Below are positions 2,534 to 63,972 of a stretch of 64,000 nucleotides of DNA, one piece after another. Each line of letters opens with the position of its first letter. Position 1 is the stretch's first letter. This DNA is from Pristiophorus japonicus. Lineage: Eukaryota. The stretch covers positions 25,420,001 to 25,484,000 of the forward strand of contig NC_091980.1 in assembly GCF_044704955.1 (NCBI RefSeq), written 5' to 3'. Both the position numbers and the translations under genes were made by a program. Below the pieces are notes generated by a model. It did no database searches and was not told where the DNA came from. It saw only the letters and a list, made by a program, of their open reading frames with translations.

Positions 2534-2625
2534 CCTGATCCACATCAATAGTTTTGATGCTATTTTAATAACAGAGTATTTTTTCTACACTTCACACAAA
2601 TACAAATTCTTATCTTCTGTTCCAA
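2534..2625 (-). pseudogene. Broken 3' half of a paralogous Ig C2-type exon
   Basis: The minus strand reads GTEDKNLYLCEV*, homologous to EDQELYACEVQ of exon 3044-3313. It then frameshifts to TIDVDQ with a CAGG|GTAAGT donor. The adjacent intron (ttaatatctactgt) matches that of exon 3044-3313. Confidence 0.7.
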
Positions 2626-3043
2626 AGTGCCACTCTCAGCTTTTCCTCTCTTCCTCCCCCAAAGCCCCACTCCCAGCCTGTCATTTCCCTCTGCCCACCA
2701 TCTCTCCTCTACATTCCCATCATTTCCATCCTTCCCTCTCCCGTTCATGGCCATTGATTCCCTGCCCTTCCCTCTTCCCTTAGTCCTACTCCCAGCTCAA
2801 TGCTTATTTGAAGCCGAGAGTATGCAGCAGCTGGAATCATTTCCAACAGCCGCAGAACTGGGTTAGAAGTGGCATTGAGGGGAGAGAGGCCAGTTTTTTG
2901 TTCAATGCTGATATGTGCACCAGGCCCCCACATGCTGACTGTAAGCAGGAAGTGCTGATGGTTAACATGTATGACTCCACTTTATATGTAACAGTTTTAA
3001 ATTAGTAACTCTTTAATATCTACTGTGATGTAACTGTACTTAC

Positions 3044-3313
3044 ATTGTGACACAGAAAAAGCTGCTTTTCCTGTGCGCATAATGGACCCATTTTCCTGCA
3101 CTTCACACGCATACAACTCCTGATCCTCTACTGCAACATGTCTGACTATCAGATAGACTGTGTTATTTAGTCGGACCTGATCAGTGTTCCTCCTGTTCTG
3201 CTGAGATGAGTCTCTCTGTTTCCATTGAAGACTGACTGTATCTGAGAGTTTGGAGATAGTACAGCTGAGTGTAACATCACTGCCCACCACAGCTCTCTGT
3301 AGACTTCTCTCAA
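3044..3313 (-). CDS. Ig C2-type domain exon of a CD4/LAG-3-like multi-Ig protein
   Basis: 270 nt, phase 1/1, ttcacag acceptor and GTAAGT donor. Translation (V)ERSLQRAVVGSDVTLSC...SLQW...TVYLIV...EDQELYACEV has the canonical C-W-C core and is open. Confidence 0.85.
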
Positions 3314-3962
3314 CTGTGAAAAACAGATCAATAAGATTTAGTATAAGTCGTGACATGTACAATCCAATGATTAGGTTCTAACTGACAGTAGGATGTGACC
3401 ATCATCAGCATTTGCATCTTGCTGCATTAAAGAGCCAGGTCAGGTTACTAACAGTGCATTTTAATCAGTAAAATATTGGGCCCGAAATCTCTCGGTCCTG
3501 TTCCACCAATGTAAGTGAGGCAGCGTGGGGTCGGTCAACTTTACCCCTGACCCTGCTGGAGTATCTGGCATCAGGTCAAGGTTACGCAGTTTGGATGGCA
3601 TTTGGGGATGGTGATACCACAATGGACAGATAATGGAATCGCACCAGAGGAGGGTGTGATGGAAATGTCACGCCCATATTATCAGACATGGAGAAGGCTC
3701 CAGTTCAACTCTGTTCTCAATGTGCCTAGCACACTGCAGTAAGACCTCCAAACACATGCACTGGGAGCCTGTGCACAAAACCCACATCAAAAGTCATTAC
3801 AGCCCCAGACATTATTTAAATTAGTGTGCTCCCAGAAGGCTCTAATCATTGAGGCCCCATGAGAAATAGCACTTCAGGAGACACTTGTTCTAAAAATGTT
3901 CACCGTTACTTTCAGTCCTACATACAAAAAAATGCAAGTAATAATCAAATCATCAACATGGA

Positions 3963-4317: not shown

Positions 4318-4318
4318 T

Positions 4319-8098: not shown

Positions 8099-8443
8099 CT
8101 TTGATCCCAAATAGTTCATACTGTTTCAGGATTTTATTACTCGGCTGTGTTTGAGACAAGATAAACGATCCCGCAAATTTAAATGTGGGATTTCTAATTC
8201 TCAGGTCAATGGTACCACGAGGATCCTGTTTCACGCTCTGGAACAAGTCTTTGTATGTAATGGGATCACTCCATTGTGCGGCCCACTGGCCCGAACTCCC
8301 TTTGTGAAAAGTAACCAGCCGCTGGATTGCTTGCCCTGAGTGTGGTTTCCATTCCCAGACAACAGGGCCATTCCCAGGATTGTCTGGTCCTTTTAATGGA
8401 ATGTCATCTCCCTTATCCAAAAAATAAATATGAGTTGTGTTTC
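8099..8443 (-). CDS. Cysteine-less Ig V-type domain exon (CD4 D3-like)
   Basis: 345 nt, phase 1/1, ctaacag acceptor and GTGAGT donor. Open frame NTTHIYFL...LKGPDNPGNGPVVWEW...IDLRIRNPTFKFAGSF...KQYELFGIK. It is a paralogue of the exon at 63628-63972 with identical length. Confidence 0.85.
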
Positions 8444-10368: not shown

Positions 10369-12881
10369 TGTTATAGCTCACTGGATGGGCTTTAGGACCC
10401 TGCGGGAGCTATTCACAGTTGCTGTACTCATGCTGGTTCATGCTGGTTTGGGGACTCCATTTTGGCTTGTTGTATAAAGCACACGGTTTGAGTTGTTTAC
10501 GCGTACACAACATCATTTGGCGATGAGGGTGGCTCAAATTAATCTTCCTACCCCCCACCTTTCACTCCACACACGGGAACCCTCCAATTCTGAGGCCGAG
10601 TTGGATAAAAAGCTTTTCTGCCTACATCATGGCGAGTGGGTTAGACATCAACAACGTAACACCAGCTCGCCACTATGCAATACTGATCCATTGCCTCAGC
10701 ACCGAAGGCCAAATGTAAGACACGGAGTCCTACAATAAAACGGTAAGCGCTCCGGAGAACTTTTTTGAGCCAAAAAAAAGTATCGTGATGGAGAAATACC
10801 AATTTTGTAAAAGGGGTCAAGGGAACGGTGTATCTTCTGGTTCTGTACCAATCTGCGGTATTCAAGTCCAGTCAAGGTCAGCTTCCCAGTCGAAATAGCG
10901 AGGCTCTCTTTGCTCGTAGATGGTTTTTCTTCTCTCTGTCCCAGACTGATTGCTCAGTTCCTGTGGTTGATTGAAGCAAGCAGGTTTAGAAGAGGGGCGA
11001 GAGAGAGAGAAATATAGCTGCAAACTGCCATCTCTTATACCTACAAAATGCTTCTTCTCGCGCCAAAAGTTCAACTGTCCATTCGCCTGAGGCATTCCAA
11101 CTGAAAAGCAAGACACATTTCCAGCCTGTTTCTTTGTTACTGGGCCTTCTCCTGTGGATCTGGCTCCGAAAAGTTTGGGTGTCCACATAGTTTCTGTAGT
11201 GTTTGAAGTCACTCTAGTAATGACTCCACGAGGTAAGGTATTGCACTTGAACTGTTGTGACCTTCAGGTGCTGCGATGGATCCAAATTTGGAGCAGCCTA
11301 GGACTTCGATCGCCGGGACCTGGAGGTTGTCCCAGCTCCAACAGATTTTGATTTGCTTCATCCAACTTCTTCTTAGCAGCATTGGACCATCACCAGTAAC
11401 GATCCACAAAGGTAGCTTGTGCATCGCGCCACCGTAGGACACCTGGACATCCACGCTGCCAACGACTGGGATGGTGTCGTTCGTGTAAGTGAGCAGCTTC
11501 GCCTGGATTGGTAGCATTTTAGGCTGTTCGATAGGGTTGTCCCAGAGTTTCTCGAAGGCCGCCTGGTTCATCAGTGATTGGCTCGCCCCTGTGTCGACCT
11601 CCATCAAGACTGGAACACCGTTGATTTCAACTTCTATCTTCAACGGGGAACTCTCAGTGAAGCAGGTAAACACTCCGTACATCTCTTCCTGGGGCTGAGC
11701 TGTCTCCTGAGCTATCTCTTCGTCTTCATCAGCGCAGGAGCCCGGGTGATCGGCCAACTCTTCAGCGACTCAGTGAGTAAAATTTCTTTTACGCATTTGC
11801 TGTAGATGGCATTTAGTGTTGCAGCCCTTGCAAGTATAGTCTCTGTATCTGCATTATTGGGCTCTGTGATTTCCTCCACAGCGCCAGCATGGGGCTGGCC
11901 GGTTGACCCCCTGTGGCAGACTCAGGGTTGCGGGGTTCGGGGTCACAGTCTTACCTCTGAAAGGCGCCATTCGGTTCGCTGTACTTGCCGTGTTGGAGTC
12001 CTGGAGTTGAGTCATCATCCTTCTGGAATCGCAGGACGAGGCCATGAACGCTTGGCTCACGTTAATTGCTTTCTGCAGGGTGACGGTGGTGTCCGCAGAG
12101 AGCAGCCTGTGGAGGAGGCCTTTGTGGCCGATTCCAATAACAAAGATGTCCCTCAGTGCTTCGGTGAGGTGGTCACCAAAATCACACGGTGCAGCCAATC
12201 GTCTCAGGTCTGCAGCATATTTTGTGATTTTCTTTTGGCCTTTTTGACAAGCTTGTGTTCTAAGTTTACGACCCAACTGGCATATCTGTGTCCATGTTGG
12301 ATTTTGACAAGCAGTATCTCTCAATTTTCACAGGGTTTGGAGTGACAACAAAATTCTGCCATCGTCCCCGTGTTGACCCTTCCATCAAACCTGTTATGCA
12401 GCGACTTTGCCGTCTCCCATTTGCAGTTCGCGACCAAATATCCGCAGAATTAACGTGACTCGAATCTCAGGGAATCATTGAGAGCATCGACTCCTCATCT
12501 CGAATTTAGTCTTTGCTTGGAGTAAAAATGTATCGACCTGAAAGAGGTCAACAAGGCTACCATCCCCGACAAGTACCCTCTTCCTACCATCAACGAAGTG
12601 TCTTCAGAATTCCACGGCTTAATAGTCTTTACGAAACTCGCCATGCGCCGCAGTTACCTGCAAATACCCCTAGCGGAGGATAGCAAACCGCTCACAGCAT
12701 ACACGGCACATGATGGTCTGTATCAGTATTGACGCATGCCCTGCGGGAGCTATTCACAATAACTGTACTCATGCTGGTTCATGCCGGCTTGGGGACTCCA
12801 TTTTGGGTTGTTGTATAAAGCACACGGTTTAAGTTACTTTTCTCCTGGCTCAGTTCGTCAGTTATTTACACGTACACAACA
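10369..12881 (+). mobile_element. Internally deleted Gypsy LTR element (5' LTR 10369-10512, PBS TGGCGATGAGG, gag and RT remnants, partial 3' LTR 12739-12881)
   Basis: Two similar LTR copies (ccctgcgggagctattcaca...gtacacaaca). RT remnant DKYPLPTINEV...FTKL...YLQIPL at 12360-12735. Confidence 0.8.
10830..12340 (-). mobile_element. Gypsy gag-protease fragment nested in opposite orientation
   Basis: Gag (ADLRRLAAPCDFGDHLTEALRDIFVIGI, zinc knuckle CWRCGGNH) and aspartic protease MEVDTGASQSLM. Confidence 0.85.
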
Positions 12882-17210: not shown

Positions 17211-17589
17211 TGTGTGTGTGGGTTCATTAAACACTCTGATAAAGTAAAACAATATGACTGTGATTGGTGGAAATAAGGCACTTACTTTGTGTGAGAACAG
17301 ACGGAAGTAGAAACACACAGAAACTGCACATCAAACCAGCTGGCATTTTGTTGCAGAAAAATCGTCGACTCATTTCACAGATTCAGTCTATTTCCCTGTA
17401 AGAAATATACACATAGATATACATTTATATATAGAACAAGGGTGATTAATTGACGTTGTTGATTTGATAAACTTATAAATTATATGTGGAATGTTTGTTT
17501 GTGGTGCCTCTCATTTCAGCTTTATGCCCAGGAGTTCTGTGAAAGAGGGATGGTAAGATGGGGAAGTGGTGAGCAACGGGGATCTGGGG

Positions 17590-18225
17590 TTTCATTCATT
17601 GGAACCGGAGTCTGAGGAGGTGTTCACGGTCAGCCCGACCGGAACGGGGATCTGCTGCCTGCCCCCTCCCTTCCTCCCCCTCCCCCTCCTCCTCCTCCTC
17701 TCCCTTCCATGGTGAATCCCACTCTCCTGGCAAAGCCACATGTAAGTGCCTCCTGCTTCTCTCTGTTCAGAGAGAATACAATGAAATCCCTTCTCCTGGA
17801 GTGTAGAGCCTCAGTGACCTCCCGGATTCAGTGATGGATGGCAAACTGGGAGATGTTAGCTCTATTTCCTGCTCCAGACTGGAAGGATGTAGTGGCAAAA
17901 AAATTGAGGGCCGCGGTGACCTTGAGGGCCGCTGGCACCGCATTCGTCGGCATGCTCTGAAGCTGCAGGTCTGTTTGCAGGAGGTGGCAGAGATCTGTGA
18001 CCACCTCCTTGGTGAAGCGGAGCCTCCTAATACACGTTTGCCGGTTTAAGTTCAGGTGGGACAAGTGCTCTCGGAAGACCCTAGGTGGTCAAGGCCTCCT
18101 GCTGAGAGCCCTCGTGCCCTTCCTCCACCTCCCTATGTGGGCATCTTGTTCTCTTCTTTGCTGCCCCCTCTCCCTCTCCCTATCATACTCGAGCGCGAGA
18201 GGGACTGCAAATAGAGCCCCCATGA
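17590..18225 (-). mobile_element. HARBI1-like transposase fragment (internally deleted)
   Basis: TCIRRLRFTKEVVTDLCHLLQTDL...LKVTAALNFFATTSFQSGAG. Duplicated at ~21585-22205. Confidence 0.8.
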
Positions 18226-18325
18226 CCAGGAGCAAGTGGTGTAAGCAGAACCCTTTGGCTGTAAAGCGCATTGGGATGTCTGGTGGACGTGAAAGGCGCT
18301 ATATAAATGCAAGTCTCTCTTTTTT

Positions 18326-18750
18326 TCAAGATATCCCAAAGTGCTTTTTAAGCAATGAAATATTTTTGAAATGCTGACACTGTTGTCAAGTAGGAAACTC
18401 AGCAGCCAATTTGCACACAGCAAGGTCCCACAAGTTGTAATGAAATTAATAACCAGTTCATCAGTTTTATGAGTACTTTGAGGGATAAATGCTGACCAGA
18501 CCACCAGGAGAACTCAGCTGTTCTTCTTCAAATAGTGTCCAGGGATCTTTAATGTTTACCTGAGAGGACAGACGGGCTATCAGTTAATCTCCTCTTCCAA
18601 AAAAGGGCACCTCTGACAGTGAAGCACTCTCTGAATATTGCACAGGAATATCAGCCTAGATTATGTGCTCAAGGCTGTGGAGTGGGACTTTAACCCACAA
18701 TCTTCTGACTCAGAAGTGAGAGTGCTAACACTGAGCCACTGCTGACACCT
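18326..18750 (-). mobile_element. tRNA-derived SINE (DeuSINE/SacSINE1-like)
   Basis: Minus-strand head with TGGCTCAGTG A box and GGGTTAAAGTCCC B box. The body and tail (aatttgcacacagcaag) resemble the shark DeuSINE from memory. Duplicated at ~22320-22742. Confidence 0.6.
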
Positions 18751-19044
18751 TGTATTTCGAGCTTTTTTTCTGAAAGTTATGTGAAACTAATAATTTTTAT
18801 ATTTGGTATAACAAATTGAATATATCATACCAACTCTGAAACTAAAGCTAAATTAATTCTTTTACTGATCTATAAAATGCTGGACAAAATTTTCATGGGC
18901 TTATCTCACTGGTCCTGACTTGGGTCATGTGAGCATCCCATTGCAGTAGATGGTTATATTAGTGTTGCAGTGTTAGATTCACTATATTTGAGCCTTGTGG
19001 AGATCGTTGAAGGATGTCAGTCTGGTTAATGTAGCACTTCCTCT

Positions 19045-21327: not shown

Positions 21328-24300
21328 TTTGCTGCAGAAAGATTGTCGGCTCATTTCACAGATTCAGTCTCTTTCCCTGTAAGAAATATAAACATAGATA
21401 TACATTTATATATAGTACATGATTTATTAGTTGACATTGTTGATTTGATAAACTTATAAATTTTATGTGGAATTTTTTTTGTGATGCCTCTCATTTCAGC
21501 TTTATGCCCAGGAGGATGCTGTGATCTTCCGTGAAAGAGTGATGGTAAGATGGGGCAGTGGTGAGCAACGGGGATCTGGGGTTTCATTCATTGGAACCGG
21601 AGTCTGAGGAGATGTTCACGGACAGCCCTTCTGGAATGGGGATCTGCTGCCTGCCCCCTCCCTTCCTCCTCCTCCTCCTCCTCCTCTCCCTTCCATGGTG
21701 AATCCCATTCTCCTGGAAAAGCCACATGCAAGCACCTCCTGCTGCTCTCTGTTCAGAAAGAATACAATGAAGTTCCTTCTCCTGGAGTATAGGGACTCAG
21801 TGACCTCCCGGATGGATGGCAAACTGGGAGATGTTAGCTCTATTTTCTGCTCCAGACTGGAAAGATCTGGTGGCAAAAAAATTGAGGGCCCCGGTGACCT
21901 TGAGGGCCGCTGGCACCGCATTCGTCGGCATGCTCTGAAGCTGCAGGTCTGTTTGCAGGAGGTGGCAGAGATCTGTGACCACCTCCTTGGTGAAGCGGAG
22001 CCTCCTAATACTATTTTGCCAGTTTAAGTTCAGGTGGGAGTAGTGCTCTCAGAAGACCCGAGGTGGAGAAGGCCTCCTGCTGTGAGCCCTCCTGCCCCTC
22101 CTTCTCCTCCCTATGTGAGCATCTTGTTCTCTTCTTCGCTGCCTCCTCTCCCTCTCCCTATCATACTCGAGCACGAGAGGGACTGCAAATAGAACCTCCA
22201 TGACTGAGAGCAAGTGGTGTGTGCAGAACCCTTTAAAAGTGCTTCATTGGCTGTAAAGCACATTAGGATGTCTGGTGGACGTGAAAGGCGCTATATAAAT
22301 GCAAGTCTCTCTTTTTTTCAAGATATCCCAAAGTGCTTTTCAACCAATGAAATATTTTTGAAATGCAAACACTGTTGTCATATAGGAAACTCAACAGCCA
22401 ATTCACACACAGCAAGGTCACACAAGTTGTAATGAAATTAATGACCAGTTCATCAGTTTTATGAGTACTTTGAGGGATAACTGCTGACCAGGCCACCAGG
22501 AGAACTCAACTGTTTTTCTTCGAATAGTGCCCAGGGATCTTTAATATTTACCTGACAGGACAGACGGGCTATCAGTTAATCTTCTCTTCCGAACGAGGGC
22601 AGCTCCGACAGTGAAGCACTCTCTGAATATTGCACAGAAATATCAGCATCGATTATGTGCTCAAGTCTCTGCAGTGGGACTTTTACCCACAATCTTCTGA
22701 CTCAGAGGCGAGAGTGCTAACATTGAACCACGGCTGACACCTTATATTTAGAGCTTTTTTCCTGAAAGTTATGTGAAAATAATATTTTTTATATTTGGAA
22801 TAACAAATTGAACATATCATACCAACTCTGAAACTAAAACTAAATTAATTATTTTACTGATCCATAAAATGTTGGACAAAATCTTCATGGGCTTATCTCA
22901 CTGGTCCTGACTTAGGTCATGTGAGTAAACCATAGCTAATGTTTCTCTCTCCTCGGGTACTGTCCCCCTATGCAGTCATCACCTCTCTCCTCAAAAAAAA
23001 AACCGCCGACCCCTCCGTCCTTGCAAACTGCCGCCCCATCTCCAACCTCCCTTTCCTCTCCAAAGTCCTTAAAAATGTCGTTGTCTCCCAAATCCGTGCC
23101 CATCTTTCCCAAAATTTCATGTTTGAATCCTTCCAATCCGGTTTCCATGCCTGCCACAGTACCTATACGGCTCTCATCAAAGACACAAATGATATCTTTA
23201 GTGATTGCTCCTCGTCCTTCTTGACTTGTCTGCAGCCTTTGACACGGTTCACCACTCCATCTTTCTCCAGCGTCTCTCCACTCTCAGCTGGGTGGGACTG
23301 CACTCGCCTGGTTCCATTCTTGGCTATCTAATCGTAGCCAGAGAATCACCTGAAATGGCTTCACTTCCATCCAGCATCATTACCTCCGGTGTCCCCCAAG
23401 GATCTATCATTTGCCCCTCCTATTTCTTATCTACATGTTGCCCCTTGGCGACATCATCTGAAACCACACCTTCAGTTTCCACATGTAACTGATGACACCC
23501 AGCTCTACCTCACTACCACTTCTCCTGACCTCTCCTCAGTCTCTATATTGTCCGACTGCTTGCCCAATATCCAGTTCTAGATGAGAAGAAATTTTCTCCA
23601 ATTGAATATTGGGAAGACCGAATCCAATGTTTTCGGTCCACGCCGCAAAGTCCTTTCCCAAGCCATTGACTCCATTCCTCTCCCCAACTTCTGTCTGAGG
23701 CTGAACCAGACTGTTCGCAACCTTGGTGTCATATTTGACCCTGAAATGTGCTTTTGACCATCTCCGTCCTTGCCTCAGCTCATCCACTGCTGAAGCCCTC
23801 ATCCATGCCTTTGTTACCTCTAGACTTGACTATTCCAATGCACTCCTGGTTAGCTTCCCTTTGTAAACTAGAGGTGATCCAAAACTCGGCTGCCCATATC
23901 CTAATTCGCACACAGTCCCACTGACCCATCACCCCTGTGCTCGCTGACCTACATTGGCTCCCGGGTAAGCACATTTCGATTTCAAAATTCTCATCCTTGT
24001 TTTCAAATCGCTCCATGGCCTCGCTCCTCCCTATCTCTGTAAGCTCCTCCAGCCCCACAACTTCCCAAGATGTCTGCGCTCCTCTAATTCTGCCCTCTTC
24101 AGCATTCCTGATTATAGTCGGTCAACCATTGGTGCCCGTGCCTTCTGTTGGTTAGGCCTCTCAGCTGTGGAATTCCCTGCCTAAACCTCTCCGCCTCTCT
24201 ACCTCTCTTTCCTCCTTCAAGATGCTCTTTAAAACCTACCTCTTTGAATAAACTTTTGGTCACCTGCCCTAATTTCTCCTATGCGGCTCGGTGTCAAATT

Positions 24301-38137: not shown

Positions 38138-38142
38138 ACTTT

Positions 38143-45300: not shown

Positions 45301-45309
45301 CAATGTGTG

Positions 45310-47792: not shown

Positions 47793-50290
47793 TTCTGGTC
47801 TATCCCTGTGAGGAGAGAGGACCAGTACAAGTTTACTTTCACCTTTAAGGAACAGCAATATACTTGGAGCTGCCTCCCTCAGGGATTCCACAACAGTCCC
47901 AGCATCTTCCACCAGTGCATGGCGAACTGTTTAAAGAGCTTCAGCCAGCCGCAACAGTTGGTGCAGTATGTGGACGACCTGCTCCTTTTCACTGACAACA
48001 GTAAAGAGCATGGTCTCCTGCTGGCAGAACTGTTGGCTGTACTCAAGGAGGGGGGTTTTAAGGTCAACCCCAAGAAGGCCCAGATAGGGTTAAAGGAAGT
48101 AAAAATTCCTGGGTCTAACACTCAGAGCAGGGGAACGAGGTATACATGAGACCCGAAGGCAAGCCGTGCAGGAACTCCTGGTACCGACCACCGTATCCGG
48201 AGTCAGATCTTTTTTAGGGATCACAGGCTACTGTAGAGATTTCATCGAAGATTATGCAGCAACTGCAGCCCCTCTACTCAGGCTCCAACACAAAGGGGTC
48301 GAGTGGGAGTGGGATCGAGGCTGCCAAGCTGCATTTCTTCAGTTGAAAAAGAACCTGCAGAAGGCACTTGCACTGGGGGCTATTGATGGGGGAAAGGATT
48401 TCTATTTAGAAGTAGCAGCCAGCGGGGACAGTCCGAGTGCAGTGCTTTTACAGGAAAGGCACGGACAGCTGAGAACGGTGGTGTACTCCTCCAGAGTCCT
48501 TGCAGAGATGGAAAAGGGGTACTCCAACTGTGAAAGGCATCTGTTAGCCACTCACTGGGCTGTGAAAAAAGCACAGGTTTTCACAGGAGTATCCCCTATC
48601 ACATTCCTCACCCATCACACCCCGACCCAGATTTGTTAAATGGGAGAATAAAGGATGGAACAGTCAGCTGTGCCAGGATCACTCGCTGGACCCTCCTCCT
48701 CTCCCAAATGACCATCAGGGTCAGGGGCCTCTGCGAGCCCAGGCTCGCAGCTAACCTCATATATGCAGGGGAGCCACACAGATGCTCAGTAGAAGGGGTT
48801 TGGGACACCGACTTTGGATTTCGGGCAGGGGTACATCCGATAAGCCGTGAGATCTACGTCGATGGATCCAGTTCGGTGTCCGCGGGTACAAGACTCACGG
48901 ATTGCGGAGTTTGGGACCCCGAGGCAGGCATAGCCTTGGCGCTTAAACTCCCCAGCACCCTGAGCACCTAGCAGGCTGAACTATCAGCGGTGATGTACGT
49001 GGTGACAAACCCGAGGAAGTTCCCATCCCGTACACGATTTGTTCAGACAGTATGTTTACCTGCAATTCGTGTACGGAGTATCTGGCTATTTGGTCACGCA
49101 GGGGGTACACATCCGCAAATGGGAAGCCCCTGGTAACCAAACCCCTGCTAGTAAGGATAGTGGCAGCCCTAGGAACAATAGGGACGTCTGCATCCACAAG
49201 GTTAAGGCGCATTCTAAGACAGAGCCCAGGGCAGAGGGTAACCAGCGGGCGGACCTCCTGGCCAGAGAAGGAGCCAAGACAGGTCATTTCTGGGACCCGT
49301 ATGAGAAAGGCAGGGTGATAGCAGCTAGAGGCAAGCCAGGGAAACAAGGGAGCGCAGGGGTAGCAGTGGCCCCGGACCTGAGAACGGTTCAGGCGCAGGA
49401 CCCCGTCCTCAAGTCTGCCATAGCAACCATCCTAAGTGGAGGAAAGGCAGAGAGCCCAGACAGTGCCGCAGATATAGCTGTCAAGGAAGGGATGCTGTTT
49501 AAAGGGCATAAGTGGGTGGTTCCAGCACAACACCAGCAGGAGTTCCTACAACTGGCCCAGATGCAGGATATCCCGGGCCAGAGTCCACCTGGCAGAAGGT
49601 GGAACAGGCAGCATGTTGGCCAGATCTCCGGAACGACGTCCGTGATTTCTGCGCAGCCTGTCTGGTGTGTGCAGCCAACAACCCAACCCCCCAGAAGAGA
49701 AAGGCATCCATGGGACACATCAGGCGGGTAGAGGGACCATGGCAGTCGATCCAAATCGACTACATAGGGCCCCTACCAACCGCCCGGGATGTGGGTGGGG
49801 GGAGGGGTACAAGTACTGTCTAGTGCTGGTAGATGTTTTCTCCAAATGGGTGGAAGCCTTCCCTTGCCGAACAGCTACTGCATTGGGGATGGCCAAGATC
49901 CTGGTCAGGGAAGTGTTCTCAAGGTGGGGTCTGCCACAGTTTGTGGAGTCCAACCAGGGAAGCCACTTCACCGGCCAGGCCACCTTAAAGGTACTGGGGA
50001 TTAAAGCACGGTGGCATGTAGCGTACAACCCCCAGTCCTCAGGACCTGTAGAGCGTCTCAACCGCACCATCAAGGAAAGGCTCTGCAAGGAGACAGGGAA
50101 TTCACTCAACTGATGGGTAGAGGTCTTGCCACTAGTCCTTATGGGAATCCGGGCCAGTCAGTCGAAAAGCACAGAGTATTCACCCCACGAGCTGATGACT
50201 GAGAGACCCATGAGGACCACAATATACACATCGGTGCCGGGTCTCACCGAAGGACAGCTTCAGGAAGCTAACCGAGACCGCTTTGCTAGG
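47793..50290 (+). mobile_element. Endogenous retrovirus-like pol (RT, tether, retroviral-type RNase H, integrase), degenerate
   Basis: LPQGFHNSP and YVDDLL RT; degenerate Gypsy-type RH/tether (SAVLLQERHG...YSSRVL...CERHLLA); second RNase H (IYVDGSS...AEL...SDS...KVKAH...GNQRADLLA); integrase (IQIDYIGPLP, VDVFSKWVEAFP, YNPQSSGPVERLNRTIK). Confidence 0.8.
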
Positions 50291-54112: not shown

Positions 54113-54382
54113 TGTTAACCTTGAGATAATATGGAATTAAAACCTGGCGTGTGTTTTGATAAAACAAAGCATATATCCAGTTCCCTCTGCCTCTGTCAGC
54201 TTTCTGAATAATCAGTCTCAATGATTTCTCTTCCCCATTCCGTCCATTCAATGTTTTCTCTCCAACAGTTTTGCCATCACTATTGATCCAAACAAGACTC
54301 ATTGATTCAGTGACATCAGAGACAGAGCAGGTCAGGGTAACGGTGTCTCCCTCAGTCACTGCATCAGATGGTTCAGCTGTGA
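54113..54382 (-). CDS. Ig C2-type domain exon (CD4/LAG-3 D2-like), F-strand Cys replaced by Tyr
   Basis: 270 nt, phase 1/1, ttccacag acceptor and GTAAGT donor. (V)TAEPSDAVTEGDTVTLTCSVS...LVW...GRGNWIYALF; TGG ATA TAT sits where WxC is expected. Confidence 0.85.
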
Positions 54383-54460: not shown

Positions 54461-54799
54461 CTTTAACTGTGATTAATTTAATGGTCACAAATTTATTTGG
54501 TCCCCGAAAACATGTGTAAACTCCTGCATCTTCATACAGTACAGGGACAGTCCTCACACTGAAGTTCTTGCCATTATAATTTCCCACTGTGGGCACCAGT
54601 CGACTCCCAAAGTCGGTCCTGTTTACATTGATCGGCTCAGATCTGAAAGTAGAAGCTATTTCTTTCTCTTGATTCTGAAAATGAAATGACTTCCAGGTCC
54701 ATGTAGTTTTATAGTACTCAGAAAGAGCTTCACAAATCAGGTCGAGTTCACCGTGATCTGTGTCTGACAGATAAAGTGTTTCTATCTTATTGTGTAAAT
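54461..54799 (-). CDS. Ig V-type domain exon with canonical Cys pair (CD4/LAG-3 D1-like)
   Basis: 339 nt, phase 1/1, atcacag acceptor and GTAGGA donor. LHNKIETLYLSDTDHGELDLICE...TWTW...FGSRL...NFSVRTVPVLYEDAGVYTC...KLITVK, open. The ORF track shows only its 3' part. A 78-nt intron separates it from the next exon. Confidence 0.88.
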
Positions 54800-55699: not shown

Positions 55700-58041
55700 C
55701 CTAATGCCTGCCCCCCAACCTAGCCTCGGGCCATCTACCATCAATGGCGCTACTCGGTGCCGAGCTTGCGGCCAACACTTGGCCACAGGCAATTAGGCCT
55801 ATCGAGCTGTGCCTGGTCTCCAGTTGTCTTGGATTCCCTTGCCACTGGACTGGTTCAGCTAAGCCCGTGTGGTTGCCAGTGTGCAGCGGCCACCCCACGT
55901 TAAAAGCACTCACGCACAGGCATCTTCCACTTCGTCAGTATGAAGTTCGGGACCTGGAATGTCAGGACCCTCATGGACAATCCCAACAGCAACAGGCCAG
56001 AACGCCGCACCGCGATAGTTGCCCGGGAACTCAGACGTTTTGACATTGACATTGCCGCCCTAAGCGAGACCCGGCGGGCAAGGGAAGGCCAGTTGAAGGA
56101 ACATGGTGGAGGTTACACCTTCTTCTGGAAAGGGAAACCAGAGGCAGAACACCGCCTTCATGGAGTCAGCTTTGCCGTCAAAAATGAGCTGGTTTACCGC
56201 CTCAAAGACTCCCCCTGTGGGGTTAACGAACGCCTCATGACTCTTCGTATCACCCAATCCCGGAATCAATGCACCACAATCATCAGTGCATATGCCCCTA
56301 CACTCGATGCAAAAGAGGTCTTTTGTTCCAACCGAGAGACATTCTTGTCCCACGTCCCCATGGGTGACAAATTGATCCTTCTGGGTGATTTTAATGCCAG
56401 GGTCAGCAAAGACACAGCCCTCTGGGGAGGCGTGATTGGTAGAGAGGGGGTAGAGAAAGCCAACTCCAGTGGTACCCTACTCCTGACAAAATGTCTAGAA
56501 CATGAACTCCTCATCACCAACACCCTGTTCCGCCAGAGGGACAAATATAAGGCAGGGATCGCAAGGATGTGCGCATCACCCGCGCCATGACAAGAGCTGA
56601 CGACTGCTGGACGGACCACCGCCTAATCCGATCAATCATCAACATTAACATTGCCCCAAAGCAGAGAGGATAGCAGAAGAAGTTCCACAAAAAAGTTAAA
56701 ACCTGAGCACTTTGAGACCCAGCTAAAAGAGCCCTATACCGCCAGCGCCTCTCAGCCAATCTGGCATGCCTTGATGACCCTGAGATACTGAATGCCCACA
56801 GCGCTTGGTCTGCCATCCAGGCCTCTATAACAAGTGCCTGTGAAGAGACACTTGGTCACTCAACCAAAAAACATCAGGACTGGTTTGATGAAAATGATCA
56901 GGAGATCGAAGAACTAATAGATCGCAAGCACAAAGCATTTCCGAGCCTCAAGCAATAACCCAACTCGGGAGCTGCAAAACAACATTACAGACGGCTCAAG
57001 GCTCAGGTCCAACAAAAACCCGGTACCTAAAGAACAGGTGGTGGATGGAGAAAGCACAAGAGATACAACAACTGGCTGACAGCCACGATATGCAAGGATT
57101 CTTCACTGCAGTCAAGGCCACCTACGGTCCAAAATCCCAAGGCCCCACCCCACTCCTGGCCAAGAACAGGGAAACACTCATCAAGGACACCGAGGCTGTT
57201 AGGGCCCGATGGAAGGAGCACTTTGAAGATCTCCTCAATCGAGACTCGCCTTTGACTCGAGTGTTCTCGACTCCATCCCGCAGCATGCGATCCGCCACCA
57301 ACTCAGTGAAACTCCAACATTGCACGAGGTAGGCAAAGCCATAAAACAGCTGAAGAATAACAAAGCTACAGGTGCCGATGGAATCCCTGCTGAGGCACTA
57401 AAATATGGCGGAGAGGCGCTGTTGGCGCGGATACATGACCTCATCTCTCTCATTTAGAGGGAGGAGAGCATGCCGGGAGATCTCAAAGATGCAGTCATTG
57501 TGACCATTTTTAAAAAGGGGGACAAGTCCGACTGAAGCAATTACAGGGGAATCTCCCTGCTATCAGCCACTGGGAAAGTTGTCGCTAGAGTTCTCCTCAA
57601 TCGACTTCTCCCTGTGGCCGAGGAACTCCTCCCGGAATCACAATGCAGATTTCTTCTCCTACGGGGCACAACAGACATGATCTTTGCAGCGCGACAGCTG
57701 CAGGAAAAATGCAGGGAGCAGCGCCAGGCCTTATACATGGCCTTTTTCGATCTTACAAAGGCCTTTGACACTGTCAACCGTGAGGGTCTATGGAGCGTCC
57801 TCCTCCGTTTTGGATGCCCCCAAAGGTTTGTCAACATCCTTCGCCTGCTTCACGATGGCATGCAGATTGTGATCCTGCATGTGACCAACAGATCCATTAC
57901 AGACCCAATTCACATCTGGACATGAGTCAAACAGGGCTGCGTCATCGCTCCAACCTTCTTCTCAATCTTCCTCGCCACCATGTTCCACCTCACAATCAAC
58001 AAGCTCCCCGTTGGAGTGGAACTAAACTACAGAACCAGCAG
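55700..58041 (+). mobile_element. RTE-clade LINE (endonuclease and 5' part of RT), truncated at the LTR
   Basis: MKFGTWNVRTLMD...DIAALSETR...LLGDFNARV; YRGISLLS...LPESQC...FDLTKAFDTV; KQGCVIAPTFFSIF...GVELNYRTS, ending abruptly at 58041. Confidence 0.9.
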
Positions 58042-58309
58042 TGTCATGTATCTCACACTACTGTATATAACTGTATCTTACCATGCTATACATGACTGTA
58101 ACTAGATATGACCTGTAACCACAAGTATACTTTACCACCAGGGGTGCACTTGCAGGAGACACTTCATACCTGTTCCACACAGGTATATAAAGGCAGGTCT
58201 CAGGCAAGTGTGGCACTCGAGAGCTGTGAGATAAAGGTGCAGGTCCAGAGTGACCTTGACTTCAGCATGTGCCTCGTGTAAGTCTGTACTGCAGGGTCAG
58301 GACTTTACA
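58042..58309 (+). mobile_element. Solo Gypsy LTR (family of the LTR at 39943-40190), no target-site duplication
   Basis: TGTCA...TTACA, with a TATA-like gtatataaa. It is reverse-complement similar to 39943-40190. Flanks gcag| and |ctgc differ. Confidence 0.88.
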
Positions 58310-58343
58310 CTGCCCATTACAGGCCTCTGTGAATCTGTTTCAA
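58310..58343 (-). pseudogene. 5' stub of an Ig C2 exon truncated by the LTR
   Basis: ttctacag|TT GAA ACA GAT TCA CAG AGG CCT GTA ATG GGC AG = (V)ETDSQRPVMG, homologous to (V)ERSLQRAVVGS of exon 3044-3313, at the expected position after the Cys-less V exon. Confidence 0.75.
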
Positions 58344-58837: not shown

Positions 58838-61800
58838 GGCCGTGATTTTGCTGACCTTGGCGGGTCCATGACAGGCGACATTGGTGGCGTATCCCGACCC
58901 CGCTGCTGGCTTCATCCCGCTCTGTAAAATGAATTTCCCTTGATGGGGCTTGTTAAGCCCGTCCAACGTATTTCGCGAGCCAAATAGAGGAAGTTCAGTC
59001 AGTTTCCTTAAAGGGACCATGTACATATTTATTTGGTCAGTTGTGCTCTCAGTGTTCTACAGCATTGAGGTGCTGCAAACACTGACAGTTACTGCACAAA
59101 GGCACAGGGCTGCACCCAAACTCTCCCATGACTCACTACATATGCTTATGGAGGGAGTCATAGCACACAGGGAGGTCCTTTTCCCTTCTTATGGGTGGAA
59201 GACACCTCCCCAGAAGATCAACACAGCCCGGGTGCACATTACAGAGGAGGTCACAAGCAGGAATATGGTCAAGAGGACATGGGTGAAGTGCTGCAGACAT
59301 TTCAGCGATCTTCGTAGATCATGAAACGTTAGTACAAAGCCACACTCAGACTCATCCTGCTGTGCATCTCATCACATCCCCATCACTCTGCCTTCCATAC
59401 CCTACACCTGCACATCCTTACCCACACCAACTTGCCTTGCACCTCCACCCATCCCTCTCTATTATCACAGCGCAATCTCACTAGCCACCCCTCACATTCA
59501 CACTCATCCTATTGCAATCGTATCAATTAACAACACACAAGGGTAGGCATTTGGGTGTTTTATGCAATATTCATGTAAAGTTTCTGTTAATATGGTGTCA
59601 AACATTGATACCTTTATTTTAGAAACATAGAAACATAGAAAATTGGAGCAGTTTTGGCCCTTCGAGTCTGCACCGACATTCAATATGATCATGGCTGATC
59701 CTCTATCTCAACACCATATTCCCTCTTTGTCCCCATACCCCATAATGCCTTTTGTTTCTAGAAATCTATTTATCTCCCTCTTAAATATATTCAATGACTT
59801 GGCCTCCACAGCCTTCTGTGGTAGAGAATTCCACAGGTTCACCACCCTCTGAGTGAAAAAATTTCTCCTCATCTGGTCCTACATTTCCTACCTTGTATGC
59901 TGAGACTGTGACCCCTTGTTCTAGACATCCCAGCCAGGGGAAACATCCTCCCCGCATCAAGTCTATCCAACCCAGTCAGAATTTTACACGTTTTAATGAG
60001 ATCCCCTCTCATTCTTCTAAACTCTCGTGAATACAGGCCTAGTCGACCCAATCTCACCTTATACGACAGTCCTGCCATCCCAGGAATCAGTCTGGTGAAC
60101 CTTCGCTGCACTCCCTCTATGACAAGTGTATCCTTTCTTACTGCACACAATACTCTAGGTCTGGTCTCATCAAGGCCCTGTAAACTGTAGTAAGACATCC
60201 TTGCTCCTAAACTCAAATCCTCTTGCAATGAAGGCGAACATACCATTTGCCTTCCTAACTTCTTGCTGCACCTGCATGTTCGCTTTCAATGGCTGGTGTA
60301 CAAGGACACTCAGGTCCCTCTGCACATCGACACTTCCCAAGTCATCATCATTCAAATAATACTTTGCTCTTACGTTTTTCCTAACAAAGTGGATAACTTC
60401 ATATTTATCCACTTTATAATGCATCTGCCATGTTTGCCTACTCACTCAACCTATCTAAAATCGCCTTGCAGCGTCTTTGCATCCTCCTCACAACTCACAA
60501 TCCCACATAGTTTTGTGTCAGCAGCAAACTTGGAATTATTACATTTGGTTCCCTCATCCAAATCATTTATATATATTGTCAATAGCTGGGGCCCAAGCAC
60601 TGATCCTTGAGGTACCCCATGAGTCACAGCCCACCACCCTGAAAAAGACCCGTTTATTCCTACTCTCTGTTTCCTATCAGTTAACCAATTTTCAATCCAT
60701 GCCAATACATTACCCCTAATCATATGTGCTTTAATTTTGCACATTAACCTCTTATGTGGGACTTTATCAAAGACCTTCTGAAAATCCAAATACACTACAT
60801 CTACTGGTTCTCTCTTATCTATTCTATCAGTTACATCCTCAAAAAACTCCAGTTGGTTTGTCAAACATGATTTCCTTTCATAAATCCATGTTGACTTTGT
60901 TTAGTCCTGTTATATTATCTAAGTGTGCCATTATCACATCTTTTATAATAGACTCCAGCATTTTCCCTACTACTGACGTCAGGCTAACCGGTCTGTAGTT
61001 CCCTGTTTTCTCTCTCTGTCCTTTTTTAAATAGTAGAGTGGGGTTACATTTGCCACCATCCAATCTGCAGGAACTGTTCCATAATCTATAGAATTTTGGA
61101 AGTTGACAACCAATGCATCTACTATTTTGATCGCTACCTCTTTTAGTACTCTGGGATGCAGATCATCAGACCCTGGGGATTTATCTGCCTTCAGTCCCAT
61201 TAGTTTCTCCAGCACTATTTTCTTACTAATAATTATTTCCTTTAATTCCTCGTGCTCACTAGATCCTTGGTTTCCGAGCATTTCTGGGACGATATTTGTG
61301 TCCTCTTCCGTGAAGACAGAACCAAAGTATTTATTTAATTGTTCTGCCATTTCCTTGTTCCCCATTACAAATTCTCCCGTTTCTGTCTGTAAAGGACCTA
61401 TATTTGTCTTCACTAATCTTTTTCTTTTTACGTACTTGTAGAAACTTTTGCAGTCGCTTCTTATGTTTCTTCAAGTTTACTCTCATACTCATTTTTTCCC
61501 CTCTTAATCAATCTCTTGGTCCTTTTTTGCTGAATTCTAAACTGCTCCCAATCCTCAGATTTGCGATTATTTTCTGGCAACTTTATATAACTCCTCTTTG
61601 GATGTAACACTATCCTTAATTTCTTTGTTAGCCATGGTTGGGCCACTTTTCCTTTTGTGTTTTTACGCCAGAAAGGAATGTATAACTGTTGCAATTCATC
61701 CATTCATTCCTCAAATATTAGCCATTGCCTATCCACCGTCATGCCTTTTAATGAATCTTTCTAATCTGTCATAGCCAATTCAGTCCTCATACCTTTGTAG

Positions 61801-63157
61801 TTTCCTTTGTTTAGATTTAGGATCCTAGTTTCGGATTGGAATACTTCATTTTCAGCTCAATAAAGAATTCAATCATGTTATGGTCAGTCTTGCCAAAAGG
61901 ACCCCGCACAAGACTGCTAATTAACCCTTTCTCATTACATAATACCCAATCTAGGATAGCTTGTTCCCTAGTAGGCTCCTCAACATACTTGTCTAAAAAA
62001 CCATCACGTACACACTCCAGGAATTCATCTACAACAGGATTATTCCTAATTTGGTTTAGCCAGTCTACCTGTAGATTAATGTCACCGATGATAACTGTAG
62101 TATGCTTACTACACGCATCTCTGATTTCCTGTTTGATGCCGTCCCCTACACTACCACTACTGTATGGAGGCCTATAGACAACTCCCACCAATGTTTTCTG
62201 CCCCTTGGTGCTCCTTAGCTCCACCCAGACTTTTTCAACACCTTGCTTTCTTGTACAGATCTGTGTGCACCTTTGGAAGTGGCTTAGTGAGTTGCAGTAA
62301 CTATTGAGACAAAACAGTACTCTGTGCAGTACTGATAAATGTGAAAGGAATGGCTTGGGCACTGTAGGGATGCTTCATGGTATTGGTGTGGGGTGCTGCC
62401 AAACTGGCACATCAAATGGCAGTCAGGGTGCACAGTGCCAAGTGAAATAAATCTGGCCATGGTGAGGCCATCCCTGGTGTCCCAGGTAGCAATGTGCTTG
62501 GGTTCTGATGCCCTGTGTCCTGTGCAGCATTAGTTGATTGGTGTTGTTGTTGGTGCTGCTGGTGACACTGGTGCTGCTGGTGTTGGGGATGATAGTGGTG
62601 GGATTCTGAGGACAAAGTTGAGATAGTATAAAGTGCACCCATGCTAATGCAATAGATGGCAGGTGAAGTTGAGATGACAGAAGCAATCTGTTAATGGTGA
62701 GAGAGGTTGTTCCAATGAGGTGACACTGGATAGAGAGTTTGCTACAAACATTTGCAACCTGCATAAAGCTCAACCTGTCTTTGAAATGCAATAACCAACA
62801 GCTTCTGAGCTTGCAAAATGAACAGCTGTGAGGTGGGAGCTTTTATTACACATTTAAAGCTGTCAGGTAATCAGCTGTTTCAATGGCCATTCATCTCCCG
62901 CCTCAGCTTAACTGACATGATCCCCGAGCAGTGAAGACTCCATGGGCGAGCAATAAAAATCACAAGATGAGCTCAAATGTATTCTTAATGATTTCTAAAC
63001 AAGATCATAATTGCCTGAATTCGATTCCCCGCCGCTGCGTGTCGGGTCTGCTCAGCACTGACATACGCGACATTGGGAAAGGCGCGTGGCGGTGGTTTCA
63101 CTTTACCACCTGACCCGCCACTGATCGCGCTCACTGACCCCACTGAAAATTCCAGCC
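58838..63157. mobile_element. Non-autonomous Harbinger derivative (family of 4319-6086) split by a CR1 insertion
   Basis: Ends ggccgtgattttgc / gaaaattccagcc. Myb remnant AAPKLSHDSLHML...EEVTSR...FSDLRRS. Element sequence resumes at 62231 where it stops at 59620. Confidence 0.72.
59620..62231 (-). mobile_element. CR1 LINE (endonuclease end, RT and tail), 5'-truncated, degenerate
   Basis: VVYRPP, DKSPGSDDLHPRVLKE, NYRPVSLTSVVGK, YLDFQKVFDKVPH, GVPQGSVLGP, FAADTKL, and a (TTCTATGT)n tail at 59620-59645. Confidence 0.92.
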
Positions 63158-63627
63158 ATTGGGTCAGATACCACGTGTGTATTCACGACACTCAGCTCTA
63201 CCACTCCACCACCTCTCTCAAAACCTCCACCGCCTCTGTGCTGTCAGTCTTGGATGAGCAATAACTTCCTCCAGTTAACGATTTGGAAGATCAAAGCCAT
63301 CGTCTTCGACCCTCGCCACGAATTCCATGCCATCGGCACCAGCTCCATCCTCCTGCATGGCCGTTGTCTCAGGAATTTTAGGAGGATGGATGACAAATTT
63401 CCGAAAAAATGTTAATGCTATCAATCAAAATGCCCTTAGTGCATCCACTATTTCTAATGCACAGAGGATTTTTACCCACATGGCTGTTTTGAAAGAGAGA
63501 TTCATTCTGGGCTGTGTGATAGAAATGGAGGATCATGACATCATCCCAACATTTTGTTTGAAATATTTCTGGAATTACTCACAAATAATCATATTATTTA
63601 ACCCTTTCCAGTCCTGGTTCTACTTAC

Positions 63628-63972
63628 CTTTGATCCCAAATACTTCATACTGTTTCAGGATTTGCTTACTGGGCTGTGTTTGAGTCCAGGTGAACAATCC
63701 CGCATGTTCAAAGGTGGGGTTTCTGATTCTCAGATTAAGGGTACCCCAGTCCTCACGGATCCTCTGAGAAATGCCTGGTATATTATTGTACTCAGTGCTC
63801 CATTGTATGGCCCACCGCTGACCTTCTCTGTGAAAAGTTCCCAATTGCTTTGTAATTTGTTGCCCTGAGTGTGGTCTCCATTCCCAGACAATAGAGTCAT
63901 TTCCAGGATTGTCTGGCCCTTTCAATACAAAGTTTTCTTCCTGATGGAAAAAATAAATATAATTCCGGCTTC
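63628..63972 (-). CDS. Cysteine-less Ig V-type domain exon (CD4 D3-like), paralogue of 8099-8443
   Basis: 345 nt, phase 1/1, ctcacag acceptor and GTAAGT donor. SRNYIYFF...LKGPDNPGNDSIVWEW...TLNLRIRNPTFEHAGLF...KQYEVFGIK, open. Confidence 0.87.

What the first reader, a model, noticed from the sequence alone, without database searches (positions are those of the whole stretch)
2534..63972. Candidate multi-Ig receptor built from tandemly repeated CD4/LAG-3-like V-C2-V-C2 modules
Seen: seven symmetric phase-1 Ig exons or exon remnants on the minus strand. The order is Vx(no Cys)-C2(stub)-V(Cys)-C2(WxC-type)-Vx(no Cys)-C2(YxC)-C2(half). The Cys-less V/C2 pair recurs, with identical 345-nt V exons, and no TM exon is visible between the units. 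Established: CD4/LAG-3 have a V-C2-V-C2 ectodomain with WxC in the C2 F strand, and mammalian CD4 D3 lacks the disulfide. Inference: this is a CD4/LAG-3-related gene, or a tandem cluster, whose four-domain unit has been multiplied. It could encode a long ectodomain that is not classical CD4 or LAG-3, and may be an under-described cartilaginous-fish immune receptor family.
Basis: partly seen in the sequence, partly recalled or inferred. Interest (0 to 1): 0.8.

Follow-up and report, generated by a model that had tools for sequence, protein, structure and literature searches.

The report
Two neighbouring shark multi-Ig receptor genes
The Ig exons are real, but they belong to two neighbouring genes of a large, unnamed shark and ray immune-receptor family with a CD4/LAG-3-like outer part: the damaged back half of an eight-Ig gene and the intact start of the next gene, not one giant repeated gene.

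Summary
There are three corrections:
- The "WxC" C2 exon reads W-I-Y in this copy.
- The two 345-nt V exons are equal in length only (74% nt, 54% aa identity).

The exons match about 100 database proteins, nearly all named "uncharacterized protein", from sharks, rays and a chimaera. The best match is 91%, to Pristiophorus japonicus paralogues. Family proteins are built SP-Vx-C2(YxC)-V(Cys)-C2(WxC), followed by either a TM segment or a second such unit.

Domain trees place VxA with the internal (fifth-domain) V type and VxB with the N-terminal type. The C2 exon at 54382-54113 ends in KVN, a motif seen only in the last Ig domain of multi-unit proteins.

The window therefore holds D5-D8 of an eight-Ig gene plus the leader, D1 and D2 of the next gene. 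In the first gene, D6 is cut to 36 nt, the D8 cysteine is lost, and no TM or tail exon follows. The proposed 54113->8443 splice is unlikely.

LAG-3 and CD4 are the closest solved relatives by sequence profile and by predicted fold, but the family fails two of their defining features.

The scan had already met this family on other DNA of this genome. Expression could not be tested.

The parts
63628..63972 (-). Gene 1, D5 exon (VxA): Cys-less V-set domain of the internal, post-D4 type. 345 nt, phase 1-1, open frame.
   Evidence: Splice sites read. 91% identical to P. japonicus P0055 residues 63-178. Sits in a clade (100/94*) of 21 internal Vx domains.
58308..58343 (-). Gene 1, D6 exon stub. The acceptor and first 36 nt (V-ETDSQRPVMGS) are kept, then unrelated sequence follows with TGA at 58299-58297. 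About 235 nt of the exon are missing.
   Evidence: Sequence read. 12 of 12 residues match P0055 179-190. Paralogues continue with D(I/V)TLSCTIS.
54461..54799 (-). Gene 1, D7 exon: V-set domain with the Cys pair. 339 nt, phase 1-1, open frame.
   Evidence: Pfam V-set match is weak. 70-73% identical to the D7 of P0051 and P0055. Sits in a starred set that holds all 15 'last unit' D7 domains.
54113..54382 (-). Gene 1, D8 exon: C2 domain of the WxC type, but reading W-I-Y here. It ends in YYLKVN, the terminal-Ig type. 270 nt, phase 1-1.
   Evidence: Pfam ig/Ig_3. 88% identical to the D8 of P0055. The KVN/KVK/PVN ending occurs only in the last Ig of multi-unit proteins (6 of 6) and never before a further Vx (0 of 20).
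21328..21354 (-). Truncated second copy of the gene-2 leader (ATG at 21354, first 27 nt of CDS only). It lies at the edge of a 4-kb tandem duplication.
   Evidence: 17347-21300 matches 21328-24946 at about 90% identity.
17286..17373 (-). Gene 2, leader exon: ATG plus signal peptide MSRRFFCNKMPAGLMCSFCVFLLPSVLTQ, with a phase-1 GT donor.
   Evidence: sequence. tblastn gives 68-71% identity to residues 1-30 of P. japonicus P0006, P0048 and P0059, E 3e-10. It joins in frame to VxB (A|GA = Arg, as in P0006).
8099..8443 (-). Gene 2, D1 exon (VxB): Cys-less V-set domain of the N-terminal type. 345 nt, phase 1-1.
   Evidence: 73% identical to P0006 D1. Sits in a clade (100/98*) of 51 N-terminal Vx domains. 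AF2 model has pLDDT 90.5 and a V-set fold, Z 13.5.
3044..3313 (-). Gene 2, D2 exon: C2 domain with standard YxC (Y-A-C). 270 nt, phase 1-1.
   Evidence: Pfam Ig_2, Ig_3 and I-set above their cut-offs. 80-85% identical to the D2 of P0006 and P0044.
2534..2629 (-). Partial duplicate of the 3' part of the D2 exon plus its donor and intron start. It carries an in-frame TAG (2587-2585), so it is a pseudo-exon.
   Evidence: 3129-2987 matches 2618-2475 at 68%. (HFGTEDKNLYLCEV*).

Best explanation
The window crosses the boundary between two head-to-tail genes of a large multigene family of type-I Ig-superfamily receptors. The family occurs in sharks, rays and chimaeras and is nearly always named 'uncharacterized protein' in databases.

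Family proteins are built signal peptide - D1 (Cys-less V) - D2 (C2, YxC) - D3 (V with Cys pair) - D4 (C2, WxC). This is followed either by a TM segment and tail, or by a second V-C2-V-C2 unit (D5-D8) and then the TM.

There are two tail types. One has two ITIM-type motifs. The other has a lysine inside the TM helix and a short tail. The family therefore looks like paired inhibitory and activating receptors.

Gene 1 contributes only its second unit to this window:
- D5 (63972-63628).
- A D6 exon cut down to 36 nt (58343-58308).
- D7 (54799-54461).
- D8 (54382-54113).

Its D1-D4 should lie beyond position 64000. This copy is probably defective: D6 is destroyed, D8 has lost its F-strand cysteine, and no TM or cytoplasmic exon follows in the 36.7 kb of retroelement-filled DNA before the next gene.

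Gene 2 starts at 17373 with its own leader exon. D1 (8443-8099) and D2 (3313-3044) follow, and the gene continues beyond the window start.

Shown here: the exon anatomy, family membership, the D5 versus D1 identity, the leader exon, and the absence of tail exons. Inferred: that gene 1 is non-functional, that D1-D4 lie upstream, and the signalling mode, which is read from paralogues and not from this window.
For: Family and architecture:
- hmmsearch with the Vx profile against 1.84 billion representative proteins gave only 41 hits. Those looked up were sharks, rays and basal ray-finned fishes.
- 78 relatives of P0006 were found, nearly all named 'uncharacterized'.

Domain identity:
- VxA falls in a 100/94* clade of 21 internal Vx domains. 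VxB falls in a 100/98* clade of 51 N-terminal Vx domains.
- D7 and D8 group with last-unit domains, and the KVN ending is exclusive to terminal Ig domains of multi-unit proteins.
- The D6 stub is identical to the D6-specific start VETDSQRPVMGS.

Leader exon:
- ATG and signal peptide are 68-71% identical to paralogue leaders. The phase-1 donor joins in frame to VxB.

No tail exons:
- tblastn with paralogue tails found none.
- All 118 fetched proteins at E<=0.5 found none.
- Unfiltered HMMs of both tail types over all six frames gave a best E of 0.38, inside a retroelement.

Tail types:
- 31 proteins carry ITIMs and about 19 carry GYLLVKL with no ITIM.
Against: - No transcript data: no RNA run was listed, so no splice junction is shown.
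- All Ig exons are phase 1-1, so a D8->VxB junction is grammatically possible.
- The surviving gene-1 exons are open and not unusually decayed. Violations of 90%-conserved columns are 0 (D5), 3 (D7) and 2 (D8), all within the family range. The damage is therefore recent, or the gene is still used with D6 skipped; a predicted paralogue isoform, P0063, skips D2.
- D1-D4 of gene 1 and D3-D4-TM of gene 2 lie outside the window and were not seen.
- No database protein is identical to these exons (best 91%).
Confidence: 0.75

Rival explanations
1. One reading: one very long gene in which D8 (donor at 54113) splices to VxB (acceptor at 8443). This would give a receptor of 12 or more Ig domains made of three or more V-C2-V-C2 units.
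For: - All exons are phase 1-1 and lie on one strand.
- No TM or tail exon lies between the units.
- Very long multi-unit models exist elsewhere, such as the catshark 1710-aa model.
Against: - In all multi-unit proteins of the main elasmobranch clade, the units after the first begin with a D5-type Vx. VxB is D1-type.
- An intact leader exon with ATG precedes VxB.
- D8 ends in KVN, never seen before a further Vx. The D4->D5 junction is normally EPSG.
- The catshark model starts in a LINE-derived peptide and is suspect at its N-terminus.
Confidence: 0.07
2. Gene 1 is still functional. D6 is skipped (D5->D7, both phase 1), and the product is anchored by a diverged or distant TM exon, or is secreted. 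For example, splicing the D8 donor to the AG at 17396, just upstream of the gene-2 leader, would add Arg-Lys-stop.
For: - The D5, D7 and D8 frames are open and their conserved residues are mostly kept.
- A predicted paralogue isoform lacks D2 (P0063).
- 40 of 97 family models have no recognisable TM, although many of these are partial models.
- The acceptor and the stop were read.
Against: - The invariant F-strand Cys of D8 is replaced by Tyr.
- No tail exon was found by any search.
- There are no transcript data.
Confidence: 0.15
3. The exons are scattered dead fragments (processed or shuffled Ig exon debris) in a transposon-rich region and do not form genes at all.
For: - Two of the seven features are broken: the D6 stub and the D2 half-copy.
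- The region is dense with LTR and LINE elements.
- A 4-kb duplication truncates a leader copy.
Against: - Five Ig exons and the leader are intact, in canonical family order and orientation, with correct splice sites and phases.
- Gene 2 shows no defect within the window.
Confidence: 0.03

Closest known systems
CD4 / LAG-3 family (MHC class II co-receptors)
   Same: - V-C2-V-C2 ectodomain.
- WxC in the F strand of D4, aligned to the two WxC motifs of human LAG-3.
- LAG-3 is the best PDB hit of the family profile, E 5.9e-9.
- LAG-3 and CD4 are the top Foldseek hits of the AF2 model of paralogue P0006, E 2e-17 to 4e-15 over about 420 columns.
- The model has continuous beta-strands running from V into C2 (residues 132-147 and 336-350). 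PMC10768021 section 3.6 describes this as a rare trait of CD4 and LAG-3.
- One V domain lacks the disulfide, as mammalian CD4 D3 does.
   Different: - D2 (and D6) has YxC or YxW, not WxC.
- The Cys-less V is D1, not D3.
- No hit to Pfam's CD4-specific C2-set family (PF05790), which the Atlas's CD4 cluster carries.
- Tails have ITIMs or a TM lysine, not Cx(C/H) or the LAG-3 (F/Y)xxL(D/E) context (PMC10768021).
- It is a multigene family with 4-, 8- and more-Ig forms, whereas sharks have their own CD4 and LAG-3 genes (PMC10768021).
- The margin over generic IgSF hits is small: CEA scores 2.8e-8.
Teleost G6F-like proteins
   Same: By protein-language-model features, 'g6f-like' clusters (526-538 aa) are among the nearest named clusters to catshark paralogue P0061, scoring 0.96, next to CD4 clusters.
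   Different: This is a lead only: there is no alignment or E-value, and no G6F sequence was fetched or compared here. No Ig_LY6G6F family appeared in the Pfam scan.
CD2 / SLAM family (2B4, NTB-A, CD48; Ly9 has duplicated V-C2 units)
   Same: - An N-terminal V domain without the canonical disulfide, followed by a C2 domain.
- 2B4 is the top Foldseek hit of the VxB model (E 1e-6, TM 0.68).
- NTB-A scores Z 13.2.
- The V-C2-V-C2 build of Ly9 is from my own knowledge.
   Different: - No sequence-level match. The PDB phmmer search with VxA found nothing relevant.
- The structural scores are tied with many unrelated V-set domains such as NITR, CAR and MPZ.
- D3-D4 and the WxC motif point to CD4/LAG-3 instead.
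Paired activating/inhibitory Ig receptor families (KIR, LILR, CEACAM, NITR and others)
   Same: Multigene clusters in which similar ectodomains carry either ITIM tails or a charged TM residue for an ITAM adaptor. Both types are present among the paralogues.
   Different: The domains are unrelated in sequence. The analogy concerns signalling logic only, and neither tail type is encoded in this window.

Membership tests
Unnamed chondrichthyan Vx-C2-V-C2 receptor family ('uncharacterized protein' LOC119965406/7, XP_067899148 and others) | Cys-less V domain with the GPDNPGN...WEW(K/R)PHSGQ...L(R/K)I.NP.F..AG.F signature | tested here: met
   VxA and VxB match family proteins at E 1e-35 to 1e-68. 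No violation of 90%-conserved columns.
Unnamed chondrichthyan Vx-C2-V-C2 receptor family | Exon and domain order Vx - C2(YxC) - V(Cys) - C2(WxC), each domain on one phase 1-1 exon | tested here: met
   The order in the window matches the order in the proteins. In this copy D6 is truncated and D8 reads W-I-Y.
Unnamed chondrichthyan Vx-C2-V-C2 receptor family | TM plus either an ITIM tail or a TM lysine | tested here: not met
   No such exon is in the window. For gene 2 the tail is expected outside the window. For gene 1 it is missing where expected.
CD4/LAG-3 family | V-C2-V-C2 ectodomain with rod-like V+C2 pairs (continuous G/A strand) | tested here: met
   AF2 model of paralogue P0006: strands 132-147 and 336-350 cross the V->C2 junctions. 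Top Foldseek hits are LAG-3 and CD4. This rests on a predicted model, not a solved structure.
CD4/LAG-3 family | WxC motif in strand F of both D2 and D4 (PMC10768021) | tested here: not met
   D4/D8 have WxC in the family (W414, C416), but D2 has YxC and D6 has YxW. The window's own D8 reads W-I-Y.
CD4/LAG-3 family | Cytoplasmic Cx(C/H) LCK motif (CD4) or (F/Y)xxL(D/E) motif (LAG-3) | tested here: not met
   Paralogue tails carry I(H/Q)YxxI and VIYAQI ITIMs, or are short behind a TM lysine. No Cx(C/H) was seen. No tail is encoded in the window.
CD4/LAG-3 family | Conserved synteny with the CD4/LAG-3 locus; low copy number | not testable with these tools
The family has many paralogues per species, unlike CD4 and LAG-3.
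CD2/SLAM family | Sequence-level homology of the Cys-less V domain, and a C2 domain with two disulfides | tested here: inconclusive
   Only fold-level similarity was found, tied with many V-set domains. No sequence match. D2 has a single Cys pair.

The most novel reading that the evidence does not exclude
The window may catch unit multiplication in progress. An upstream family gene has lost its TM and tail exons, and lies head-to-tail, in the same splice phase, in front of an intact family gene. Read-through transcription with a D8->D1 splice would then make a fused receptor of 12 or so Ig domains. This could be the route by which the 8- and 16-Ig members arose. The tree suggests such duplications happened at least three times independently (main elasmobranch D5 clade, the Heterodontus/Hemiscyllium/Chiloscyllium clade, and Callorhinchus).
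Probability: 0.07. Interest if true: 0.7.

Novelty: new variant of a known kind. Interest (0 to 1): 0.5.

Why it matters
Cartilaginous fish are the oldest lineage with MHC-based adaptive immunity, and sharks were once thought to lack proper CD4.

A large, unnamed family with a CD4/LAG-3-like V-C2-V-C2 ectodomain is a candidate for how that scaffold was used before, or alongside, MHC class II co-reception. The family comes in inhibitory (ITIM) and activating (TM lysine) versions and in 4-, 8- and more-domain forms.

It also gives a natural series for studying how Ig receptors grow by whole-unit duplication.

This window adds a gene boundary, the D1 versus D5 distinction, and an example of transposon-driven decay within the cluster. 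It does not add a new kind of gene beyond what the scan had already met elsewhere in this genome.

Tried and rejected
- Pfam on single exons gives only generic Ig families, and nothing for the two Vx exons.
- PDB phmmer with single exons was not discriminating. VxA hit only a chance plexin stretch.
- A candidate TM exon at 53199-53161 (TFQHPRYFAFVLV) was rejected. It ends in a stop, and I judged it by eye to lie in repeat-like sequence.
- Tail and TM searches found nothing: tblastn with tails from eight species and from five P. japonicus paralogues, and unfiltered HMMs over all six frames.
- RNA evidence: the look-up of sequencing runs listed no run, so read laying could not be used.
- The Atlas look-up of the window's own exon failed. 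A stored homologue was used instead.
- The conservation-violation test for pseudogene decay was not decisive.
- A literature search found no paper that describes this family.
Every search used single exons or natural database proteins.
Full report
**Observation**

Reading the minus strand confirms seven Ig exons or remnants. All have AG acceptors, GT donors and phase 1 at both ends.

| Feature | Coordinates | Length and notes |
|---|---|---|
| VxA | 63972-63628 | 345 nt |
| C2 stub | 58343-58308 | 36 nt homologous; TGA at 58299-58297 |
| V(Cys) | 54799-54461 | 339 nt |
| C2 (WxC type) | 54382-54113 | 270 nt, after a 78-nt intron |
| VxB | 8443-8099 | 345 nt |
| C2 (YxC) | 3313-3044 | 270 nt, reads Y-A-C |
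| Partial C2 copy | about 2629-2534 | in-frame TAG at 2587-2585 |

Three corrections apply.
- The "WxC-type" exon reads G-N-W-I-Y in this copy.
- The two V exons are equal in length only: 74% nt identity and 54% aa identity.
- A leader exon lies between the units (see "Which domains these are").

The DNA between the exons is packed with LTR and LINE retroelements.

**What the exons belong to**

Pfam sees only generic Ig families, and nothing for the Cys-less V exons. A profile of VxA plus VxB was searched against 1.84 billion representative proteins and found just 41 proteins.

Those looked up are all named "uncharacterized protein":
- Scyliorhinus canicula XP_038652085, 1710 aa.
- Heterodontus, Narcine, Hemiscyllium and Rhinoraja proteins.
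- A Mobula protein of 974 aa.
- Pristiophorus japonicus UPI00398F616C, 509 aa.

More distant relatives occur in eels, sturgeon and bowfin. A search with the sturgeon protein added paddlefish and bichir.

A word search with the sawshark protein returned 78 relatives in sharks, rays and Callorhinchus. Nearly all are unnamed.

The best identity to the window's exons is 91%, between VxA and P. japonicus P0055 and P0051. No database protein is encoded by this window exactly.

**Family architecture**

From the sequences, family proteins are built as follows:
- Signal peptide.
- D1: Cys-less V.
- D2: C2 with YxC.
- D3: V with the Cys pair.
- D4: C2 with WxC.
- Then either a TM segment, or a second unit D5-D8 followed by the TM.

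Tails fall into two classes.
- 31 proteins have ITIM-type motifs such as I(H/Q)YxxI and VIYAQI.
- About 19 have a lysine in the TM helix (GYLLVKL) and a short tail without an ITIM.

By established knowledge of paired immune receptors, the first class would recruit SHP phosphatases. The second would pair with an ITAM adaptor of the DAP12 or FcRgamma type. This is inference from paralogues; the window encodes no tail.

**Which domains these are**

I built a maximum-likelihood tree of 101 Vx domains.
- VxA sits in a clade (100/94*) of 21 domains that all follow a D4. Sharks and rays are mixed in this clade, so the D1/D5 split predates their divergence.
- VxB sits in a clade (100/98*) of 51 domains that all follow a signal peptide.

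Other evidence agrees.
- The stub begins VETDSQRPVMGS, the D6-specific start. It matches P0055 at 12 of 12 residues.
- The V(Cys) and C2 exons group with last-unit D7 and D8 domains.
- The C2 exon ends in YYLKVN. KVN, KVK or PVN occurs only in the terminal Ig of multi-unit proteins (6 of 6) and never before a further Vx (0 of 20), where EPS(G) is usual.

tblastn with the N-termini of the sawshark paralogues found a leader exon at 17373-17286.
- It encodes ATG and MSRRFFCNKMPAGLMCSFCVFLLPSVLTQ.
- It is 68-71% identical to paralogue leaders, E 3e-10.
- Its phase-1 donor joins VxB in frame, giving Arg as in P0006.

**Reading**

The window holds two genes.
- Gene 1: D5-D8 of an eight-Ig gene, whose D1-D4 must lie above 64000.
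- Gene 2: the leader, D1 and D2 of the next gene, which runs off the window start.

An earlier, unchecked scan note records a 687-letter CD4/LAG-3-like signature 15.6 kb before the window start. That is exactly the length of a D3-intron-D4 block: 54799-54113 in this window is also 687 nt. It would fit the D3-D4 of gene 2, but I could not check it.

**State of gene 1**

Three things are wrong with this copy.
- D6 is cut to 36 nt.
- D8 has lost a cysteine that is invariant in the family (C416).
- No TM or tail exon of either class exists anywhere in the window. This was tested by tblastn with paralogue tails, by all 118 fetched proteins at E<=0.5, and by unfiltered HMMs over six frames (best E 0.38, inside a retroelement).

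However, the surviving exons are open and not unusually decayed. The damage is therefore recent, or a D6-skipped product is still made. I put "defective copy" at roughly 0.6-0.7 within the two-gene reading.

**Relation to CD4 and LAG-3**

Evidence for a relationship:
- A 22-sequence family profile hits LAG-3 first in the PDB (E 5.9e-9). The family's gnWtC aligns to both WxC motifs of LAG-3. CEA (2.8e-8), PD-L1 and CD276 follow closely, and CD4 scores 3.6e-5.
- An AF2 model of paralogue P0006 (pLDDT 77.6) has LAG-3 and CD4 as its top Foldseek hits. E-values run from 2e-17 to 4e-15, and CD4 gives the best TM-scores among the top hits.
- The model shows continuous strands crossing both V->C2 junctions. 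PMC10768021 (section 3.6) calls this trait rare and typical of CD4 and LAG-3.

Evidence against membership:
- D2 lacks WxC.
- The tails differ.
- The family is multigene, while sharks have their own CD4 and LAG-3 genes (PMC10768021).

So it works like, and probably shares ancestry with, the CD4/LAG-3 scaffold, but it is not a member by the tested criteria.

The isolated VxB model (pLDDT 90.5) is an ordinary V-set fold. Its best matches (NITR11 Z 13.5, NTB-A 13.2, 2B4, CAR, and rat CD4 D3 at Z 11.0 with 19% identity) are effectively tied.

An Atlas look-up of a catshark paralogue placed "g6f-like" and CD4 clusters nearest. This is a lead only.

**Limits**

- No RNA run was listed, so no splice junction is demonstrated.
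- The flanks are invisible.
- The scan had already noted this family on other DNA of this genome (s1-876454, s1-876477, s1-878457). My independent tests agree with those notes on the family's nature.

Noticed in passing
window 17347-21300 and 21328-24946: A tandem duplication of about 4 kb (90% identity). Its edge lies 27 nt into the gene-2 leader CDS. This leaves a second copy of the promoter-proximal region with a truncated leader (ATG at 21354) upstream of the real one.
   Followed up: partly
window 17396-17374: An AG acceptor (ttcttacag|GG) sits 23 nt upstream of the leader ATG, which suggests an upstream 5'UTR exon. If the phase-1 D8 donor used it, the frame would read AGG AAA TAG, a stop after two codons.
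   Followed up: no
P0001 (S. canicula XP_038652085) residues 1-53 versus window 61368-61210: The 1710-aa catshark gene model starts with a peptide that matches a LINE ORF in this window (42% identity, E 2e-7). Its N-terminus, and possibly its great length, may be a prediction artefact.
   Followed up: partly
tree (P0002, P0005, P0062, P0017, P0022): The internal Vx domains of Heterodontus, Hemiscyllium and Chiloscyllium proteins, and of a Callorhinchus protein, cluster with N-terminal Vx domains of their own small clades and not with the main D5 clade. This suggests that the four-domain unit was duplicated independently at least three times.
   Followed up: partly
window 37211-38185: A long tandem array is open in several frames (repeated ...PLALYPRSS... 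/ ...SIPGPLLSL...), with strong negative GC and AT skew at 36-38 kb.
   Followed up: no
window 40825-42749 (-), 30824-33542 (-), 46582-50113 (+), 55940-57925 (+), 59869-62362 (-), 25338-26447 (-), 11209-11757 (-): Retroelement ORFs, namely integrase, RT/RNase H, aspartyl protease and LINE endonuclease/RT, fill most of the space between the Ig exons.
   Followed up: partly
window 63084-62600, 5990-5532, 16784-16611: A repeated element (68-78% identity) lies downstream of both Vx exons and near the leader region. It is probably a dispersed transposon, not conserved intron sequence.
   Followed up: no
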